A DNA stretch of 64,000 nucleotides, from the IMG/VR virus record IMGVR_UViG_3300046171_000231, positions 171,762-235,761 of that record, one strand, 5' to 3'. Positions 4,706 through 64,000 of this stretch are shown piece after piece (position 1 is the first letter of the stretch; the number at the start of each line of letters is the position of its first letter). The position numbers and the translations under genes are program-made. The notes under the pieces are model-generated. The model worked only from the letters and a program-made list of their open reading frames with translations, did no database searches and was not told the origin of the DNA.

Positions 4706-5506
4706 ATGACAAAGTTAATTGAACCTAAAAAATATACGAAGACACTTGACCTTTTGAGGTCATTTTTTTTGTCTAGAGGTTTTTTAGAAGTCCATACCCA
4801 AAACCGTCTAAGTATTCTCGCTGCTTGTGAAGATCCAGAAACAGTAGCAACATATGAATATAATGGTGAAGTGTGGCCGTTACCACAAACGGGACAAATG
4901 TGGTTGGAGTATGAGTTACTTAAAAATCCTGATGTGCCTGGTTTCTTTTGTTTATCGACTTCATATCGACAAGAACCAAATCCAGTTGCTGGTAGACACG
5001 AAGTAATCTTTCCCATGTTTGAGTTTGAAATGCATGGTGGTGTTGATGCACTCGAAGAGATGGAGAAAGATTTAGTTGCACATTTAGGAATTGATCTTAA
5101 TCATTCTCAGATAAAAAGTTATAAACTATGGCAGAAAATATTTGGTCATGAAGAATTAGATCACGCTGATGAATCTCTCATACAAACAGGTATGATTACA
5201 GATTTTCCTGAGTGGACTTCACCTTTCTGGAATATGGCAAGAAATGAGGATGATACTAGTAAAAAGATTGATGTAATCTTAAATGGTATGGAAACAATTG
5301 GTAGTGCAGAACGCAGTACTGACAAAAAACAAATGCGTGATACCTTTCATACAATATCTGATGGACAGTATGCTGACCTTCTTTTCAAATTATTTGGTAA
5401 GGAAAGAGTTGAGAAAGAATTAGAAGAGTTCTTAGAGTTCGATTTCTTCCCCAGAAGTGGTGGAGGTATTGGTGTTACTCGTATAATGGATGCGATTCCT
5501 GATTAA
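4706..5506 (+). CDS. Class II aminoacyl-tRNA synthetase-like catalytic domain (AsnRS/AspRS paralogue lacking the anticodon-binding domain)
   Basis: Motif 2-like STSYRQEPNPVAGRHEVIFPMFEFEM, ETIGSAER, motif 3-like RSGGGIGVTRI; only 266 aa with no N-terminal OB fold. Confidence 0.85.
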   Translation: MTKLIEPKKYTKTLDLLRSFFLSRGFLEVHTQNRLSILAACEDPETVATYEYNGEVWPLPQTGQMWLEYELLKNPDVPGFFCLSTSYRQEPNPVAGRHEVIFPMFEFEMHGGVDALEEMEKDLVAHLGIDLNHSQIKSYKLWQKIFGHEELDHADESLIQTGMITDFPEWTSPFWNMARNEDDTSKKIDVILNGMETIGSAERSTDKKQMRDTFHTISDGQYADLLFKLFGKERVEKELEEFLEFDFFPRSGGGIGVTRIMDAIPD

Positions 5507-58932: not shown

Positions 58933-59274
58933 TTAATAATCTGTAACATTTAAAAATTGATTGGTTAAGGTATGCTCTAATGCGTATGCCTCCTCCTCTC
59001 TTTGTGTGTCATCTCTTAACCCCCTTACGTTTTGGTCAACGTGAATTAATTCGTGTATAAGGGTTGTTATAAAATCCTTTTCCGTTAAGTTGTTATGGAT
59101 TTCAATTTCGTTTTGGTCGTTGTTTTCTAATGTCCAACCAAAGACGTTATCCTCTGTTAAATCCGTGGGAATAACTTCAATATCCACTTCCGTTAGGTTT
59201 GGATATAATCCAGACATAAACTCAAAGATTTGATTTCCAAGAGTTGTAAATCTTTTATTAGTGATAATAAACAT
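58933..59274 (-). CDS. HExxH zincin / SprT-like metallopeptidase
   Basis: EIEIHNNL...TTLIHELIHVDQ...EEEAY. Confidence 0.75.
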   Translation of the reverse strand: MFIITNKRFTTLGNQIFEFMSGLYPNLTEVDIEVIPTDLTEDNVFGWTLENNDQNEIEIHNNLTEKDFITTLIHELIHVDQNVRGLRDDTQREEEAYALEHTLTNQFLNVTDY

Positions 59275-59396
59275 AAGGGTTAATTGCTTATATCCTATTA
59301 TTGCATATTTTCATATAAAAAAACTGGGTAGTGTGCCAGTTCATAAACTGTCCACTTTAGCTTGCACTGGTCAACCTCTCCGCTTATAATAAAGGT

Positions 59397-59461
59397 ATAA
59401 GAGGGGCAGGGTCGCCCCGATGACGCAAAAGTTCGACACTCCCCCTGCCTTCTTTTTTTTT
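59397..59461 (+). ncRNA. Candidate small structured RNA 1
   Basis: TTGCAC-17-TATAAT promoter, 5'/3' pairing stem, T9 tail, no ORF. Confidence 0.55.
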
Positions 59462-59471
59462 AAAAATAAGC

Positions 59472-59498
59472 AAAAAAATGAAGGTACTAACACCTTCA
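59472..59498 (-). terminator. Terminator of the MutH-like gene
   Basis: TGAAGGT-gttagt-ACCTTCA followed by T7. Confidence 0.75.
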
Positions 59499-59548
59499 GA
59501 GTTTTTTACAGGCACCTTACAGGCGATCCTGGTGGGAGTAGTTTGGTA

Positions 59549-60142
59549 TCATATGATACTCTTTGCGAATTTCCCTGTTAAGTAAAATGCCATTCCCTTA
59601 TTTTTCAATGTTACCCCTTTATAGGTTAATGGGTGATAAGGTTTTGAATCTTTTGTTCTGATTTGTAGTAAACCATTTAATCCTGTAATGGTTGTTAACT
59701 CTTTATCGTCTAAGTATGCAAATTGAACTTGTTCTGCGATATATTCAAAATCTTCTTCTAACATTGCATAAATTTCGGGGTTTGAATTTTCATTAATTGT
59801 TGTAGTTCCTATGAAGTTGTTTTCTCTGTCAAATGCAACAAATAATGTATTTTTTAATTTGATACCAACTTTAGTTTCTGGGAATGTTTTATAACATTCG
59901 TCATCAATTAATTCTGGTAATGTGTGTTTAAGTTGAGTAACCGCAATTGATTCCCCTTTAGTAAACGACTTCAATTCTCCGTCTACCATATCAGTAAGTT
60001 TAGAACTATTGGGAATACCAAGTGCAAGTTCTAACAACTGTCCCCGAACCCCCTTATTTTTTCGGGGTTTTGGTAGTGTGGTAAAATCAACCTTAGTTAG
60101 ATTGAATTGTACTTCTGAGAGGGTTAAAGTCATTTGCTTCAA
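59549..60142 (-). CDS. MutH/Sau3AI-family PD-(D/E)xK endonuclease
   Basis: NKGVRGQLLELALG...TD...GELKSF and LQIRTK match MutH/Sau3AI motifs. Confidence 0.8.
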   Translation of the reverse strand: MKQMTLTLSEVQFNLTKVDFTTLPKPRKNKGVRGQLLELALGIPNSSKLTDMVDGELKSFTKGESIAVTQLKHTLPELIDDECYKTFPETKVGIKLKNTLFVAFDRENNFIGTTTINENSNPEIYAMLEEDFEYIAEQVQFAYLDDKELTTITGLNGLLQIRTKDSKPYHPLTYKGVTLKNKGMAFYLTGKFAKSII

Positions 60143-60268
60143 TTGCGGTTATACAACTATTATAACCCCACCCATTCACGAAATGGGGCTACAGGTGTGC
60201 CAGTTTGTTAACTGGCATATGGGACTTACACTCCTAACCAAATTTGGATGTATGATGCCCAATAGGTG

Positions 60269-60451
60269 CTATATGCACCTATCGTCAAATAGTCTCTGTG
60301 CTTGCTTCGTGATTGCGTCACGGACTCCACCTCTTGGGTGAGCAAGTAATTCATCTAACTGCTTTTGAGTTAGTTTGTTTGATACTCTGAAGTTTTCTTC
60401 TGCTTCAACTAAGCAATCTTCAAGTATTGATTCGTGATGTAATGTACTCAT
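60269..60451 (-). CDS. Small early protein
   Basis: MSTLHHESILEDC...; promoter and CCCTT leader upstream. Confidence 0.65.
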   Translation of the reverse strand: MSTLHHESILEDCLVEAEENFRVSNKLTQKQLDELLAHPRGGVRDAITKQAQRLFDDRCI

Positions 60452-60526
60452 TTTTTTAAGGGAAATGTTTGTTATGTACTTATTATAGTCGGTAAGAGTA
60501 CCTTTGCAAGTACTCTTAACAATCTC

Positions 60527-60790
60527 TTAATATTCTGCAATCTCTCTAAGATAGCAATCAACCTCCGCAAAGGTTAACCAACCTTTAATTGAATCGTCTA
60601 TAATGTGACCATTTGGGTTGATTTCGGCAAGTTCGTATAATCCGTCATCACCCCCATATGAACCAGTATGGTTTGCAACACTAGCACCCCAACCATTAAG
60701 AAAATGAAATTTTTCAATCTGTCCACCAGTCCTGTAAAGTACCGCATAAGGTTTAAATGTGTTTAAAGAGTGAAGTTGTTTAGTAGGCAT
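60527..60790 (-). CDS. Conserved small phage early protein
   Basis: FLNGWGASV...SYGGDDGLYELA...GWLTFAEV. Confidence 0.7.
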   Translation of the reverse strand: MPTKQLHSLNTFKPYAVLYRTGGQIEKFHFLNGWGASVANHTGSYGGDDGLYELAEINPNGHIIDDSIKGWLTFAEVDCYLREIAEY

Positions 60791-60875
60791 AAGAGGAATT
60801 AACTTGTATGTACTAATTATAAAATGTGGTTAGGGGCTTTGCAACCCCTATTGTGCCACTTTCTAAACTGGCATA

Positions 60876-61298
60876 CTACCAGTTGTTACAGAATACATAT
60901 CCGTTATTGAATGTATAATCCCATGAGAGTCCATCTTCCCATGTTTTCTCCCAGTCGATAGCAACCCAATAGGGCATGTCTGGCATCCCGTAGCAATCAT
61001 TTAAAAAATTCTCAGCAAATTCTGCTTCGCTGTCGAACCTTCCATGATACGCATCATTAAGGTGTTCAACATCCATGAGATCAAATTCCTCAAGAAATGC
61101 GTCAACTGTCTCTTGGTCGTATTCTTCAACCATTCTTGCGTAGTCTTCAAAATAACAAACAAAGTCTTTTGCTCCGTGAGTTTCGATAAACTCTTTCATT
61201 TCGTCTTCGTCATGCCCGTCTTCAATTAATCCTTCTAGGTGTTCTTGGGCATGTGCTTCAGTTGGAAATGAAGTTGTTGGGGCGATTTCGTAAGGCAT
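60876..61298 (-). CDS. ArdA-like antirestriction (DNA mimic) protein
   Basis: Very acidic; DAYHGRFDSEAEFAENF...PYWVAIDWEKTW resembles the ArdA C-terminal domains. Confidence 0.72.
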   Translation of the reverse strand: MPYEIAPTTSFPTEAHAQEHLEGLIEDGHDEDEMKEFIETHGAKDFVCYFEDYARMVEEYDQETVDAFLEEFDLMDVEHLNDAYHGRFDSEAEFAENFLNDCYGMPDMPYWVAIDWEKTWEDGLSWDYTFNNGYVFCNNW

Positions 61299-61364
61299 AG
61301 TTTAAGGGTGAACTGTTTTAAGTATAGGATAGAGGGTCACGCATGGCAACCCCCAAATATTAAA

Positions 61365-61558
61365 TTAATATAAAGAATAACCTACGACTTCTTCTCCGAA
61401 CATTTCCGAAGCATCAACCGCATGAAATCCAGTTGTTAAAAGTCCGTCAATATAGGACTCATCTTCCAACTCTTCGGGTAGGTCATCTTCTTCAACATCA
61501 TAACCAATGTTGATCTCATCTTCAAGAAGTAAATCTTTGTATTCGTCAATAGTCATTT
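61365..61558 (-). CDS. Small very acidic early protein (likely start MTIDEY)
   Basis: TTGCAT-17-TATATT promoter and CCCTT leader lie inside the longer ORF call. Confidence 0.6.
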
Positions 61559-61629
61559 TTGTAAGGGAAATTTGTTTACGTTCTAATATAAACCAAGTTG
61601 CAACCCAATGCAACCCAGCTTGTGCCACT

Positions 61630-61797
61630 TTATGAACTGGCACGTCTTCGCTTGATTTCGTGTTTGGCAAGTGCTAGTCTTTGGTTCTCTTCTTCAGTGT
61701 TGAGAAGTTCCATTATACTTAATGCACGTATCATGTTACGTAACCCGACCATCTCCATGCGACGCACGTAACCCGCCTGATTATAGGTGTCGATCAC
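61630..61797 (-). CDS. Small early protein (55 aa)
   Basis: MIDTYNQAGYVRRMEMVGLRNMIRALSIMELLNTEEENQRL...; stop lies inside palindrome 4. Confidence 0.55.
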   Translation of the reverse strand: MIDTYNQAGYVRRMEMVGLRNMIRALSIMELLNTEEENQRLALAKHEIKRRRASS

Positions 61798-61934
61798 TTC
61801 ATCACCTCATCAACTAGGTTATCGTAAGTTTGAATGTCCCAACCTTTCTGCTCTGGGACTTCCATTTCGTATGCGAACATGACTAGTTCTTGTAGGTAGT
61901 CTAGTTGCGATTGTGTCAATGTTAGTTGTCTCAT
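61794..61934 (-). CDS. Small early protein (46 aa)
   Basis: MRQLTLTQSQLDYLQELVMFAYEMEVPEQKGWDIQTYDNLVDEVMK. Confidence 0.6.
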   Translation of the reverse strand: MRQLTLTQSQLDYLQELVMFAYEMEVPEQKGWDIQTYDNLVDEVMK

Positions 61935-61971
61935 AGGGGTGTGTGTATCTAGTTGTATTATAGCATGTGTG

Positions 61972-62012
61972 TCTAGTCGAGATTGTTAAGACATGCTTAA
62001 GTCTCGACTAGA
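61972..62012. repeat. Inverted repeat TCTAGTCGAGA...TCTCGACTAGA (hairpin of the array decamer)
   Basis: Perfect 11-bp arms with an inner TTAAG/CTTAA pair. Confidence 0.8.
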
Positions 62013-62019
62013 TGTTTTT

Positions 62020-62349
62020 TTAAATCTTCATTCCGTCAACGAATGGTTTAAGAGTTCCGAAATCAGATAGGAACCAATCAAAGTTTCTCTGTACCACTCT
62101 GGCACCGTCACAAAACTCTTCAAGTATTGCATTTAATCTTGATTTGGTGGTTACGGTCTCCCAACCTGCACTTGAGATGTTAAAATCATTTGATGCAGTA
62201 TCAAACCACGCAATGCAATTACCGTGAAGCATAACGTTTACTTCAGTCGTGATGCCATCTTTTTTGTAGCAAGTGACGGTGGTGTTACTACCTGACCAGT
62301 TCTTTCTGTGTCTGATAGCGTGGTTCATTTGCTCTTCAATCTTTCTCAT
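62020..62349 (-). CDS. Conserved phage early protein (TTKSRLNA motif); true start MRKIEE
   Basis: Own TTGCAT-17-TATAAT promoter; the upstream part of the 277-aa ORF call is the shadow of the next gene. Confidence 0.72.
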   Translation of the reverse strand: MRKIEEQMNHAIRHRKNWSGSNTTVTCYKKDGITTEVNVMLHGNCIAWFDTASNDFNISSAGWETVTTKSRLNAILEEFCDGARVVQRNFDWFLSDFGTLKPFVDGMKI

Positions 62350-62431
62350 AATGTTTGGGGGTTGATTTACTTTTATTATAATGGGTGGGGTTACGCAATG
62401 CAACCCCAATGTGGACAGTTTAAAAAGTGTC

Positions 62432-62932
62432 CTAATAGTATCCTGCTGCTTCCATTCCTGGTTCATCATAGAAACATTGGAATGATAAGTCTGGATACTT
62501 CTCACGCAATTTCTCCATAATTCCTTCGGGTGGACTCCAAGCAGTATCAAATTCGAGTTCCAATATCTCCGCATCATTATACTCAATGTCAACATCCCCT
62601 GCATCCCACTTTGTACCCCAGTTATTAACGCACCACATATACCAACGATCATCATTCGTACCATCTGGAAAGTTGTATGTTTCCCACATAAGTCTTCCGT
62701 CTTTGTTGAATTCCTGTTTGAGAACTGGTAATACTCCTTCCTCATTTGGAATTGTCTTGAAATCAGGTACAGGAAAAATCTCATTAAAAGGTTGTGCCTT
62801 TCTGAAAGTCTCCTCAATCTCCTTGAGTTTTGCTTCTGATTCTTCATTACCAAAGATTGTAATTCTGTTGTGACACCAGTTCGGCATAAGGGTTCTCCGT
62901 TTGTGTATGTACTTATTATAATGGATGGTCAC
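62432..62932 (-). CDS. DUF1281/YubB ferredoxin-like domain protein (likely start MPNWC)
   Basis: MPNWCHN...WYMWCVNNWGTKWD...FDTAWSPP...YDEPG. Confidence 0.8.
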   Translation of the reverse strand: MTIHYNKYIHKRRTLMPNWCHNRITIFGNEESEAKLKEIEETFRKAQPFNEIFPVPDFKTIPNEEGVLPVLKQEFNKDGRLMWETYNFPDGTNDDRWYMWCVNNWGTKWDAGDVDIEYNDAEILELEFDTAWSPPEGIMEKLREKYPDLSFQCFYDEPGMEAAGYY

Positions 62933-62959
62933 ACGGATGCAACCAATAGTAGACAGTTT

Positions 62960-63106
62960 CTAAACTGTCATAGCCAGTATATCCATATACTGTTCGTAGG
63001 TGTATACTACATCTCCAACCTCTACATCATACGGGTACCAACCGTAATACTTGTAATGGTCCCGCACATAATCCTTGATTTGGGATTTGACTTCTTTCAT
63101 CTCCAT
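62960..63106 (-). CDS. Small early protein (48 aa)
   Basis: MEMKEVKSQIKDYVRDHYKYYGWYPYDVEVGDVVYTYEQY...; stop inside palindrome 6. Confidence 0.6.
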   Translation of the reverse strand: MEMKEVKSQIKDYVRDHYKYYGWYPYDVEVGDVVYTYEQYMDILAMTV

Positions 63107-63234
63107 TAGTCTACCTCTGGGTATGAGTAGAACAATTGCCAGTAGAGGTCATTCATCAAACCAAACTCAAACGATGTTGAAGCGTGGATATCAGTTTCGC
63201 CCTCATAGCATTTCATAATTTCTTCGTAGTTCAT
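63106..63234 (-). CDS. Small early protein (42 aa)
   Basis: MNYEEIMKCYEGETDIHASTSFEFGLMNDLYWQLFYSYPEVD. Confidence 0.55.
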   Translation of the reverse strand: MNYEEIMKCYEGETDIHASTSFEFGLMNDLYWQLFYSYPEVD

Positions 63235-63360
63235 ACAGCGGGGATAACGTTTACATTCCTACTATACCCCACTCACAACAAAAAACAACCCGTAATGGAC
63301 AGTTCATAAACTGGCACACTCAAGGTTGTAATGTCCTTTATATTCGATTATAATGAGTAT

Positions 63361-63425
63361 ATAACAAAAACAAGAGTCTGGGGTAGGACTGATAGAAAAC
63401 CTTCGCCACTCCCCGAGCTCTGAAA
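63361..63425 (+). ncRNA. Candidate small structured RNA 2 (homologous to RNA 1)
   Basis: TTGTAA-17-TATAAT promoter; GGGGTAGG...TTCGCCACTCCCC core. Confidence 0.5.
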
Positions 63426-63489
63426 TAATAACTGTAACCTTCTGTAATATTTGGGATGGATCTTATCGCAATCCAGCTGCCCCGTCAAC

Positions 63490-63665
63490 TTAAGTTGTGC
63501 CACTTCGGATACTGTCCACTGGCACCCCGTTCTCTAGCAATTTCGTGTTAGAATGGATAAACTCATCGGGAAAAGAGTTTATGCTTTTCGCCCAATCAAT
63601 TTTTTCGACCTTCAGGTCATCCCAACATTCGATGTCTAGCGTGACTGTGTACACACGCTTATGCA
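63490..63665 (-). CDS. Small early protein (likely start MHKRVYTV)
   Basis: TTGACA-18-TATCAT promoter at 63726-63697. Confidence 0.55.
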
Positions 63666-63747
63666 TGATAATGTGTATCTCGAAGTGTATGTACATATGA
63701 TAGCACACATCTAGATGACGTGTCAAGTATATGAGTATATGCACACA

Positions 63748-63928
63748 TCTCGACTAGATGATATGATGTGCGGGTGTCTCGACTAGATTCATATTCACAT
63801 ACAGTATATGAGATGATGAATGATGATGAGAGTCTCGACTAGACTTATTATATGTGTGATATATCTCGACTAGCTTCTATGAGAATTATGAGTATCTCGA
63901 CTAGGAAAAATTATCAGACCTCGACTAG
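63748..63928. repeat. Array of six (T/C)CTCGACTAG decamers with unique spacers
   Basis: Copies at 63748, 63777, 63833, 63864, 63895 and 63919; spacers 19, 46, 21, 21 and 14 nt. Confidence 0.9.
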
Positions 63929-63967
63929 TTTTTATGTCAGGATTCTCAGAAATTTATGCCCGTGATG

Positions 63968-63996
63968 TTGACAAATCGCCCGTTCGATGCTACGCT
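63968..63996 (+). promoter_or_regulatory. Sigma70 promoter pointing out of the window
   Basis: TTGACA-17 nt-TACGCT with extended TGn. Confidence 0.65.
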
Positions 63997-64000
63997 CGCT

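What the first reader, a model, noticed from the sequence alone, without database searches (positions are those of the whole stretch)
63326..63475. Second homologue of the small RNA, flanked by convergent promoters
Seen: downstream of TTGTAA-17-TATAAT lies AGAGTCTGGGGTAGGACTGATAGAAAACCTTCGCCACTCCCCGAGCTCT. It shares GGGGYAGG...GAT(G)A...AAAA...TTCGMCACTCCCC with RNA 1, while the outer closing stems differ in sequence yet still pair (AGAG/CTCT). A minus-strand promoter (TTGACG-17-TAAGAT from palindrome 8) faces it, and that transcript would end in the same hairpin plus TGTTTTTGTT, with no ATG-started ORF. Inference: a paralogous sRNA family with conserved internal loops (protein-binding or decoy RNA), here possibly made as a sense/antisense pair.
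Basis: partly seen in the sequence, partly recalled or inferred. Interest (0 to 1): 0.7.

Follow-up and report, generated by a model that had tools for sequence, protein, structure and literature searches.

The report
Conserved cyanophage small RNA gene family
The stretch is one of two copies of a previously undescribed small non-coding RNA gene that is shared by many T4-like viruses of marine cyanobacteria and is read against the direction of the virus's protein genes, which makes it a likely regulator of early infection, though its target is still unknown.

Summary
The sequence is at window 63374-63421. It has one paralogue at 59403-59449. Both copies sit behind + strand sigma-70-type promoters, and a - strand promoter faces the copy in the finding.

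The window is the last 64 kb of a 235.8-kb T4-like cyanophage that carries gp23, gp18, psbA/psbD and regA. Pattern scans and covariance models found about 100 related copies on some 80 IMG/VR contigs, often 2-3 per contig. One divergent copy lies in the cultured Prochlorococcus phage P-SSM2. None was found in cellular genomes or in Rfam.

- a 5-bp hairpin with hexaloop RRGGUM. It has 22 different stems and 354 of 355 cells paired, and 19% of the paired cells are G·U, which favours the + strand RNA;
- an A-rich linker;
- a conserved (U/G)UCGNCAC-NNN-CCCUGC segment;
- an AU-rich tract or a U-run.

The closing stem is specific to this lineage. A model built only from relatives of this copy finds the other copy at E = 1.7e-5, aligned hairpin to hairpin.

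Best reading (about 0.5): an early-class regulatory RNA that pairs with gene-strand transcripts. Here that transcript is the leader made from the facing promoter. Transcription, RNA ends and targets remain untested.

The parts
63297..63317 (.). Palindromic operator GGACAGTTCATAAACTGGCAC. It is shared by the + strand RNA promoter and a weaker divergent - strand promoter for gene B.
   Evidence: The same palindrome class stands 10-12 nt upstream of a -35 box at about 13 sites in the genome. Ten of these face the gene strand. Two face the + strand, and those two are the RNA copies.
63326..63354 (+). Sigma-70-type promoter TTGTAA-17-TATAAT of this copy (RNA2). The predicted start is near 63361.
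   Evidence: 10 of 12 match. A + strand promoter scoring at least 9 of 12, mostly with TATAAT, stands 7-20 nt before the hairpin in 56 of 85 distinct copies. The transcription start itself is inferred.
63375..63390 (+). Hairpin P1: stem AGUCU/GGACU with hexaloop GGGGUA.
   Evidence: RNAalifold. Covariation score 0.65 against 0.24 in shuffles, and 0.82 against 0.26 on a second set. 22 distinct stems; 287 Watson-Crick, 67 G·U and 1 mismatched cell.
63391..63401 (+). A-rich linker GAUAGAAAACC. Its sequence and length vary among relatives.
   Evidence: Alignments.
63402..63409 (+). Conserved segment UUCGCCAC, which is (U/G)UCGNCAC across the family.
   Evidence: Conserved even in copies that were found through 5' anchors only.
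63410..63421 (+). Tail UCCCCGAGCUCU. In this lineage it pairs back to 63374-63384. Most of the family has NNN-CCCUGC(C) here.
63422..63447 (+). AU-rich tract GAAAUAAUAA followed by the repeat CTGTAA-N4-CTGTAA, conserved in the window's lineage. There is no + strand U-run.
63460..63519 (-). Convergent gene-strand promoter. It has a palindrome at 63497-63519, a -35 box TTGACG at 63488-63483 and a -10 box TAAGAT at 63465-63460. The predicted start is near 63453, so its leader is antisense to RNA2.
   Evidence: It is conserved at a fixed distance of 33 nt in the window-like relatives.
63363..63373 (-). T-rich tract (TTGTTTTTGTT on the - strand) after the reverse-complemented element. It is a possible attenuator or terminator of the - strand leader.
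   Evidence: It is conserved only in the window's lineage, and the terminator scan did not call it.
59333..59392 (+). Paralogue RNA1: palindrome around 59337-59350, then TTGCAC (59362-59367), a 17-nt spacer and TATAAT (59385-59390).
59403..59461 (+). Paralogue RNA1 body. Hairpin GGGGC/GCCCC with loop AGGGUC (59403-59418); linker; UUCGACAC (59432-59439); UCCCCCUGCC (59440-59449); U-run (59450-59461), which forms an intrinsic terminator.

Best explanation
What it is. Window 63361 to about 63435/63450 (+) is a gene for a small non-coding RNA. It belongs to a family specific to T4-like cyanophages. This genome has two copies. The other is at 59397-59461 (+) and ends in an intrinsic terminator.

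How it is arranged. Each copy has its own promoter of the phage's 'palindrome, -35, -10' class, the same class that drives about ten small gene-strand genes. Each copy points against the otherwise one-directional gene flow.

The RNA, from 5' to 3':
- a 5-bp hairpin with hexaloop RRGGUM;
- an A-rich linker;
- a conserved, probably unpaired (U/G)UCGNCAC-NNN-CCCUGC(C) segment. In this copy the tail is CCGAGCUCU, which folds back on the 5' end.

Likely mechanism (inferred). The RNA is made together with the palindrome-controlled genes and acts by base pairing with gene-strand transcripts that cross a family copy. In this copy that transcript is the about 220-nt leader started by the facing promoter at 63488-63460, upstream of genes 63234-63106, 63106-62960 and 62887-62432. 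Pairing would cover the leader's own hairpin and T-tract. It could therefore change read-through, processing or stability of that early operon. This resembles the P22 sar RNA or plasmid countertranscripts (recalled from memory).

Open point. Cis-antisense action alone does not explain why the primary sequence is kept across about 100 copies. A second partner is therefore likely: a protein, or a G-rich host or phage RNA site bound by the C-rich segment.

Shown: family membership, the hairpin, promoter conservation, orientation, copy number, and restriction to phages.
Inferred: transcription, RNA ends, the pairing partner and the regulatory outcome.
For: - The two copies are unique in the genome, and the similarity is significant.
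- Relatives come from four independent anchor patterns and two model searches.
- Hairpin covariation is strong and includes many G·U pairs. These would be A·C mismatches on the other strand.
- A + strand TATAAT-type promoter stands 7-20 nt upstream in 56 of 85 copies. A facing - strand promoter is present in 22 of 84.
- Both copies use the genome's palindrome-promoter class.
- Flanking genes lie on the opposite strand in nearly all loci.
- The family has no conserved ORF. The AUG seen in type 1 is not conserved.
- RNA1-type copies end in U-runs.
- The convergent promoter is conserved in this lineage.
- In a duplex scan of the gene-strand transcriptome, only the RNA's own antisense site and the paralogue's antisense site stand out.
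- The element is absent from Rfam and from 185,579 representative cellular genomes.
- A member is present in cultured phage P-SSM2, in an unannotated 399-bp gap, with the same palindrome and TATAAT upstream.
- The stretch is held contiguously in marine RNA libraries.
Against: - Nothing shows that either strand is transcribed. The RNA libraries are unstranded contigs, may contain DNA, and show no depth peak at the element.
- This copy has no + strand terminator, so its 3' end is unknown.
- The facing promoter is found in only about a quarter of copies, so the convergent arrangement cannot be the family's general mode.
- Cis-antisense action does not require the observed conservation of primary sequence.
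- Some subgroups replace the C-rich tail with CGAAGCAGC or UGGGGCAGC. This argues against a single universal seed.
- Five relatives have a small gene downstream on the RNA's own strand. In those phages the element could be a leader rather than a free RNA.
Confidence: 0.5

Rival explanations
1. The conserved RNA is a protein-binding or decoy RNA rather than a base-pairing regulator. The hexaloop RRGGUM and the unpaired UCGNCAC-CCCUGC segment would be recognition sites for a phage or host protein. Candidates include the phage translational repressor RegA, RNase E or RNA polymerase. The several copies per genome would raise the dose.
For: - The primary sequence of the loop and of the single-stranded segment is kept while the stem sequence is free to vary.
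- Genomes hold 2-3 copies.
- No convincing trans target was found in the phage's own transcripts.
- The phage encodes RegA.
- The tail is followed by an AAAUAAU-type tract. UAA triplets are slightly enriched there: 175 against 156 +/- 9 in shuffles. From memory, in-vitro selection with RB69 RegA yielded UAA triplets.
Against: - No binding evidence of any kind exists. The complex prediction was not run for a protein-RNA pair and counts for nothing.
- The UAA enrichment is weak, z about 2.
- Some subgroups change the tail completely.
Confidence: 0.17
2. The element works on the gene strand. On this reading it is an intrinsic terminator or leader attenuator of - strand early transcripts. The + strand promoter would be incidental, or would serve only transcriptional interference.
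For: - In this copy the - strand reads hairpin followed by UUGUUUUUGUU.
- It lies right after gene 63666-63490 and inside the leader of the next operon.
- RNA1 is flanked by A-runs and T-runs, which make it a two-way terminator.
Against: - 67 of 355 stem cells are G·U. On the - strand these would be A·C mismatches, leaving 3-bp stems in most type-2 copies.
- The - strand T-tract is missing outside the window's lineage.
- The - strand fold is unremarkable: -18 kcal/mol, z = -1.2.
- The terminator scan did not call it.
- The conserved feature is the + strand -10 box.
Confidence: 0.12
3. The element is a cis-acting leader: a conformational switch or attenuator. The 5' hairpin P1 competes with a long-range helix formed with the 3' tail, and in RNA1-type copies that helix is the terminator stem. 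The switch would set how far + strand transcription reads on. Read-through would go into antisense RNA, or into the small same-strand gene seen in some relatives.
For: - In most copies the tail is complementary to one strand of P1 or to its loop, so the two folds exclude each other.
- RNA1-type copies place a U-run right after the tail.
- Five relatives carry a small gene downstream on the same strand.
Against: - Neither copy in the window has a same-strand gene downstream.
- The long-range complementarity is mostly explained by G-rich against C-rich composition. It is absent in several subgroups.
- There is no loop-tail covariation.
- No Rfam riboswitch matches.
Confidence: 0.12
4. The + strand transcript of this copy primes or activates DNA replication. 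On this reading it is an origin RNA aimed at the adjacent non-coding region that holds six direct CTCGACTAG repeats. From memory, T4 oriE combines an early-promoter RNA with iterons.
For: - The promoter points towards a non-coding stretch of about 1.15 kb. That stretch spans window 63667-64000 and continues at genome 611-1456. It holds six direct repeats at 63749-63928 and AT-rich tracts.
- The RNA is G-rich at its 5' end.
Against: - The other copy and most relatives are not next to such repeats, and many end in terminators.
- Nothing marks this region as an origin. GC skew is uninformative because all genes share one strand.
Confidence: 0.06

Closest known systems
P22 sar RNA and lambda OOP RNA (small phage cis-antisense RNAs made from a promoter that faces a sense promoter or gene); recalled from memory
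   Same: A short non-coding RNA has its own sigma-70 promoter and is oriented against a phage operon. It overlaps the sense leader or transcript head-on. Here the predicted starts are about 92 nt apart.
   Different: - This RNA belongs to a sequence-conserved family with 2-3 copies per genome, spread across many phages.
- Only about a quarter of copies face a promoter.
- This copy has no terminator of its own.
- No expression or functional data exist.
Yfr1, the cyanobacterial small RNA with an unpaired C-rich motif (ACUCCUCACAC) between two stem-loops; recalled from memory
   Same: It has a similar size and layout: a 5' stem-loop, an unpaired conserved C-rich stretch (here CACUCCCCCUGC), and a 3' terminator in many copies. 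It would act in hosts where Hfq-dependent pairing is not expected.
   Different: - There is no sequence or model match, and Rfam scans were negative down to E = 10.
- The element is not found in cellular genomes.
- The motif differs, and some subgroups replace it.
- No host target could be searched here.
CfrI and the other non-coding RNAs reported in T4-like cyanophages (PhotoRC-II, wcaG, glutamine riboswitch), as listed in PMC9964418
   Same: These are also non-coding RNAs encoded by T4-like cyanophages, and CfrI is also antisense to protein genes.
   Different: None of those families matches this element. This one lies in the early small-gene region, has its own palindrome-controlled promoter, and is multi-copy.
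Countertranscript-driven attenuation in plasmids pT181 and pIP501; recalled from memory
   Same: There are convergent promoters. The small RNA is complementary to a leader that carries a hairpin and T-tract upstream of the regulated genes.
   Different: Here the leader's terminator-like hairpin lies inside the overlap rather than downstream of it. Its - strand form is weak. The arrangement is confined to one lineage.

Membership tests
Any Rfam 15 family | A match to a curated covariance model | tested here: not met
   There were no matches at gathering score over the whole window. At E up to 10 over 59000-64000 the only match was an irrelevant snoRNA hit at E = 7.5, elsewhere in the stretch.
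tRNA or tmRNA-like element | A cloverleaf or tmRNA fold recognised by ARAGORN | tested here: not met
   ARAGORN found no genes in the window. The UUCGNCA stretch is not flanked by a complementary T-stem, as read.
Intrinsic terminator of the gene (-) strand | A stable G+C-rich hairpin followed by a U-tract on the transcribed strand, conserved in relatives | tested here: inconclusive
   In this copy the hairpin (-18 kcal/mol, z = -1.2) and UUGUUUUUGUU are present, but the scan did not call them. The U-tract is absent outside this lineage. 19% of stem cells would be A·C on this strand.
Cis-antisense small RNA (P22 sar / lambda OOP type) | Its own promoter, oriented against a sense transcript that overlaps it | tested here: met
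   The + promoter is at 63326-63354 and the facing - promoter at 63488-63460. Both are conserved in the window's lineage. All flanking genes lie on the other strand.
Cis-antisense small RNA (P22 sar / lambda OOP type) | A discrete short transcript detected in infected cells | not testable with these tools
   Only unstranded contigs of marine RNA libraries were available. They hold the stretch but show no ends and no peak.
Riboswitch or transcription attenuator | A regulated gene downstream on the same strand | tested here: not met
   Neither copy in the window has a credible + strand ORF downstream. Five relatives do have a small same-strand gene.
Riboswitch or transcription attenuator | Mutually exclusive terminator and anti-terminator folds supported by covariation | tested here: inconclusive
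   P1 and the tail helix exclude each other, and RNA1 has a U-run. The tail helix is no better than with shuffled tails in most copies, and there is no loop-tail covariation.
Hammerhead ribozyme (prompted by CUGAUGA...GAAA in type-1 copies) | An invariant catalytic core CUGAUGA / GAAA around a three-way junction | tested here: not met
   The core letters vary (CCGAUGA, CCGUUGA, CUUAUGA), and type 2 lacks them. There is no stem II and no Rfam hit.
RNA anti-CRISPR (solitary CRISPR-repeat mimic) | Sequence likeness to a host CRISPR repeat | tested here: not met
   The type-2 pattern has no match in one genome from each of 185,579 bacterial and archaeal species. The type-1 pattern gave two chance hits in high-GC coding DNA.
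Small-peptide gene (AUG inside type-1 copies, with a GGAGG-like leader) | A start codon and reading frame conserved among relatives | tested here: not met
   The AUG is replaced by UUG, AAG, GAG or AAA codons, or is followed by an immediate stop, in many copies. Type 2 has no start codon there.

The most novel reading that the evidence does not exclude
The family is a compactly folded RNA whose conserved loop and single-stranded segment bind a specific partner outside the phage's own transcripts. That partner could be a host factor, such as RNase E, the ribosome or RNA polymerase, or a conserved host RNA. On this reading, abundant marine cyanophages carry a dedicated multi-copy RNA tool for host takeover. 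For this copy, a further possibility is that it also feeds a replication origin in the adjacent iteron region.
Probability: 0.2. Interest if true: 0.85.

Novelty: new member of a known kind. Interest (0 to 1): 0.6.

Why it matters
T4-like cyanophages are among the most abundant viruses in the ocean and kill a sizeable share of Prochlorococcus and Synechococcus. Little is known about how they regulate early infection. They lack the T4 middle-mode factors, and few phage-encoded RNAs have been described.

This work defines a structured, sequence-conserved, multi-copy small RNA. Each copy has its own promoter of a distinctive palindrome-controlled class. The RNA is present in a cultured model phage, P-SSM2. 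It therefore offers a concrete, testable handle on early gene control and on phage-host RNA biology in a host group where Hfq-type mechanisms are not expected.

The family model, with 22 covarying stems, is ready to be proposed as a new RNA family.

Tried and rejected
- Rfam: nothing at gathering or permissive thresholds.
- tRNA and tmRNA: none.
- blastn of both loci and of the short cores against GenBank phages: no cyanophage hit. A 17-nt match in podovirus S-CBP42 at E = 10 was not followed up.
- S-CAM7 and S-RIM8: no pattern match.
- S-M1, P-HM2 and Syn9: no model hit. S-PM2 gave only a weak 15.6-bit hit with a 28-nt loop, which I do not count.
- Host-derived origin: rejected, because there is no match in cellular genomes.
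- Hammerhead, tRNA-like T-arm, SRP-like, CRISPR-repeat-like and micro-ORF readings: each was considered from motif resemblance and dropped, because the defining letters are not conserved.
- A loop-tail pseudoknot and a preQ1-I-like fold: no covariation.
- The closing stem as the family's fold: not conserved.
- Complementarity of CCUUCGCCACU to a 16S rRNA segment recalled from memory. Dropped, because the central N varies among A, C and U, and no host sequence could be checked.
- Trans targets in the phage's own gene-strand transcripts: only Gly-codon-rich G tracts appear besides the antisense sites.
- RegA-RNA complex prediction: not folded, so it is no evidence either way.
- The Syn9 transcriptome paper: not held. 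The papers I could read mention no such RNA.

Full report
CONTEXT

The window is the last 64 kb (171762-235761) of a 235,761-bp IMG/VR virus record. Bases 1-610 of the record repeat its last 610 bases at 97% identity. The map is therefore circular or permuted, and the contig happens to start inside the element.

The phage is a T4-like cyanomyovirus:
- It has a gp23-type major head protein, a gp18 sheath and a 2OG-Fe(II) oxygenase.
- It carries psbA and psbD and regA.
- Almost all long ORFs lie on the - strand.

THE OBSERVATION

The quoted sequence is at 63374-63421 (+), behind TTGTAA-17-TATAAT at 63326-63354. The shared motifs occur only at 59403-59444 and 63380-63414 in the window, where shuffles give 0.00 and 0.06 expected matches. 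The same holds for the whole genome.

The facing - strand promoter TTGACG-17-TAAGAT (63488-63460) is present. The - strand reads hairpin followed by TTGTTTTTGTT. In this copy the long hairpin with the AGAGU/GCUCU closing stem is the minimum-energy fold (-16.9 kcal/mol, z = -2.6).

RELATIVES

Four pattern scans of IMG/VR used different anchors: both ends, the 5' half of each type, and the 3' segment (parsed). Two covariance-model searches followed.

- Together they gave 99 matches, 77 of them distinct, on about 80 contigs of 33-45% G+C.
- Many contigs hold two or three copies a few kb apart, as the window does.
- Neighbouring genes form shared families, including a 150-aa family two genes away in 20 of 28 type-2 loci. 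They lie on the strand opposite to the element.
- Five loci are an exception. There, one small gene (the family of window 60269-60451) sits downstream on the element's own strand.
- No match exists in one genome from each of 185,579 prokaryote species, apart from two chance hits in high-GC coding DNA.
- blastn found nothing in GenBank phages.
- The type-2 model, however, finds a divergent member in the cultured Prochlorococcus phage P-SSM2 (record 66473-66551, complement; 34 bits, E = 4e-7). It lies in the unannotated 399-bp gap between PSSM2_098 and PSSM2_099, preceded by the same kind of palindrome and a TATAAT.
- S-M1, P-HM2 and Syn9 gave nothing. S-PM2 gave only a doubtful hit.

STRUCTURE

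RNAalifold on 26 type-2 sequences predicts only a 5-bp hairpin, RGUCU/GGACU with loop GGGGUA. On 18 type-1 sequences it predicts GGGGC/GCCCY with loop AGGGUC.

The model built from type 2 alone finds the window's other copy at 27.3 bits (E = 1.7e-5) and aligns it hairpin to hairpin. The reverse test gives E = 0.25. The two copies are therefore homologous.

Across the family:
- There are 22 different stems, among them GGUGG/UCACC, GGAGC/GCUCU, GAGCA/UGCUC, GUUCG/CGAAC and AGUCA/UGACU.
- Of 355 stem cells, 287 are Watson-Crick, 67 are G·U and 1 is mismatched.
- The covariation score is 0.65 against 0.24 +/- 0.03 in shuffles, and 0.82 against 0.26 on the second set. Slid controls stay below 0.21. 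These alignments were fitted to the model, which flatters the numbers, but the raw stems speak for themselves.
- The G·U pairs would be A·C mismatches on the - strand, so the structured molecule is the + strand RNA.
- The loop is RRGGUM: GGGGUA 35 times, AGGGUC 16, GAGGUA 11 and AGGGUA 6.
- A P-SSM2-like subgroup has a 5-bp stem (AGGAG/CUCCU or AGCAG/CUGCU) with an 8-nt loop.

After the hairpin come:
- an A-rich linker of variable length;
- (U/G)UCGNCAC;
- three variable letters;
- CCCUGC(C);
- an AAAUAAU-type tract or a U-run.

- The tail is replaced by CGAAGCAGC, UGGGGCAGC, UCCUCCCGC and others.
- Pairing of tail and 5' region is mostly no better than with shuffled tails. The z-score runs from -3.6 to +1.7, and this copy scores -2.0.
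- Loop and tail do not covary.

PROMOTERS

A + strand promoter scoring at least 9 of 12, nearly always with TATAAT, lies 7-20 nt before the hairpin in 56 of 85 distinct copies. A facing - strand promoter of that quality occurs in 22 of 84.

In this genome a palindrome of the form GTGCCAGTT-N4-AACTGGCAC stands 10-12 nt upstream of a -35 box at about 13 sites. Ten face the gene strand. Two face the + strand, and these two are the RNA copies. At both copies the palindrome also serves a weaker divergent gene-strand promoter.

The facing promoter at 63488-63460 has its own palindrome at 63497-63519 and is conserved at a fixed distance in the window's close relatives. With predicted starts near 63361 (+) and 63453 (-), the two transcripts would overlap by about 92 nt. 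The - strand one would be the leader of the genes at 63234-63106, 63106-62960 and 62887-62432.

EXPRESSION

Marine RNA libraries hold the stretch contiguously with 0-2 differences. They are unstranded assembler contigs, may contain DNA, and show no peak or ends at the element. Transcription is therefore not shown.

INTERPRETATION

The best-supported reading is a phage-specific small regulatory RNA family made from early-class promoters against the gene flow. For this copy the most concrete partner is the facing leader. A duplex scan of all gene-strand transcripts singles out only the RNA's own antisense site and the paralogue's.

The strict conservation of the loop and the single-stranded segment suggests another partner, protein or host RNA, which I could not identify.

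The rivals are given with their evidence in the rival explanations. They are a protein decoy, a gene-strand terminator, a cis-acting switch, and an origin RNA aimed at the six CTCGACTAG repeats at 63749-63928.

Known cyanophage RNAs (CfrI, PhotoRC-II, wcaG, glutamine riboswitch; PMC9964418) do not match. The comparative genomics paper PMC3037559 and the P-HM2 transcriptome paper PMC5082946 mention no such element.

VERDICT

The feature is real. It is a new RNA family of a known general kind. Its function is unproven. Interest 0.6.

Noticed in passing
window 63749-63928 (and the non-coding stretch 63667-64000, continuing at genome 611-1456): There are six direct copies of CTCGACTAG spaced 24-56 nt apart. 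They lie in a gene-free, AT-rich region of about 1.15 kb that separates the end and the start of the one-directional gene array. This is a candidate origin or master regulatory region.
   Followed up: partly
window 59337, 60201, 60857, 61626, 62416, 62954, 63300, 63497; also genome 8908, 13852, 17134, 165975, 168696: A palindrome class of the form GTGCCAGTT-N4-AACTGGCAC lies 10-12 nt upstream of a -35 box, centred about 55 nt before the predicted start. It marks a promoter class for many small early-region genes and for both RNA copies. The binding factor is unknown. The same palindrome occurs in relatives and in P-SSM2.
   Followed up: partly
window 63391-64000 versus genome 1-610: The contig ends overlap by 610 bp at 97% identity, with 16 differences. 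The record is listed as linear but is probably a circular or permuted map assembled from two variants. The contig start falls inside the RNA element.
   Followed up: yes
outside the window: genome 92691-94718 (- strand): There are two Photo_RC genes (psbA and psbD). One is split into two matches with an in-frame TAG between them. This may be an intron, as reported for some cyanophage psbA genes, or a frameshift.
   Followed up: no
window 59546-59559: A perfect palindrome GTATCATATGATAC lies at the stop of the MutH-like gene next to RNA1. Similar TGTATCATATGTWACA repeats replace the usual palindrome upstream of the type-2 copies in loci L128 and L134.
   Followed up: no
window 61973-62011: An inverted pair CTAGTCGAG ... 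CTCGACTAG, the same 9-mer as the iterons, lies in the gap before the gene at 62020-62350.
   Followed up: no
L355 780-1180 (P-SSM2 record 66280-66678, complement strand): The 399-bp gap holds three successive palindrome-plus-promoter modules, all pointing against the genes. The first drives the family member. The second is followed by a small hairpin, CUUAGG-CGGCACA-CCUAAG. Locus L022 shows a similar cluster of three.
   Followed up: partly
window 60269-60451 (-); loci L157, L165, L167, L178, L193: A small gene family (MSTLHHES...) lies on the gene strand in the window. In five relatives it is inverted onto the RNA's strand, just downstream of the type-2 copy.
   Followed up: partly
window 63432-63447 and 59506-59522: The repeat CTGTAA-N4-CTGTAA lies downstream of RNA2 and is conserved in the window's lineage. 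Its reverse complement, TTACAG-N5-TTACAG, lies downstream of RNA1. The meaning is unknown.
   Followed up: no
window 59549-60142 (-) and 60876-61298 (-): Two neighbours of the RNA copies look like defence-related early genes. One is a MutH-like protein, so named in one GenBank relative at 55% identity. The other is an anti-restriction-like protein (PHROG 36653).
   Followed up: no
window 4777-4805 (-): The type-2 model gives a weak hit here (10.3 bits, E = 6.9): GGUUU-UGGGUAU-GGACU followed by an A-rich stretch. It is probably chance.
   Followed up: no
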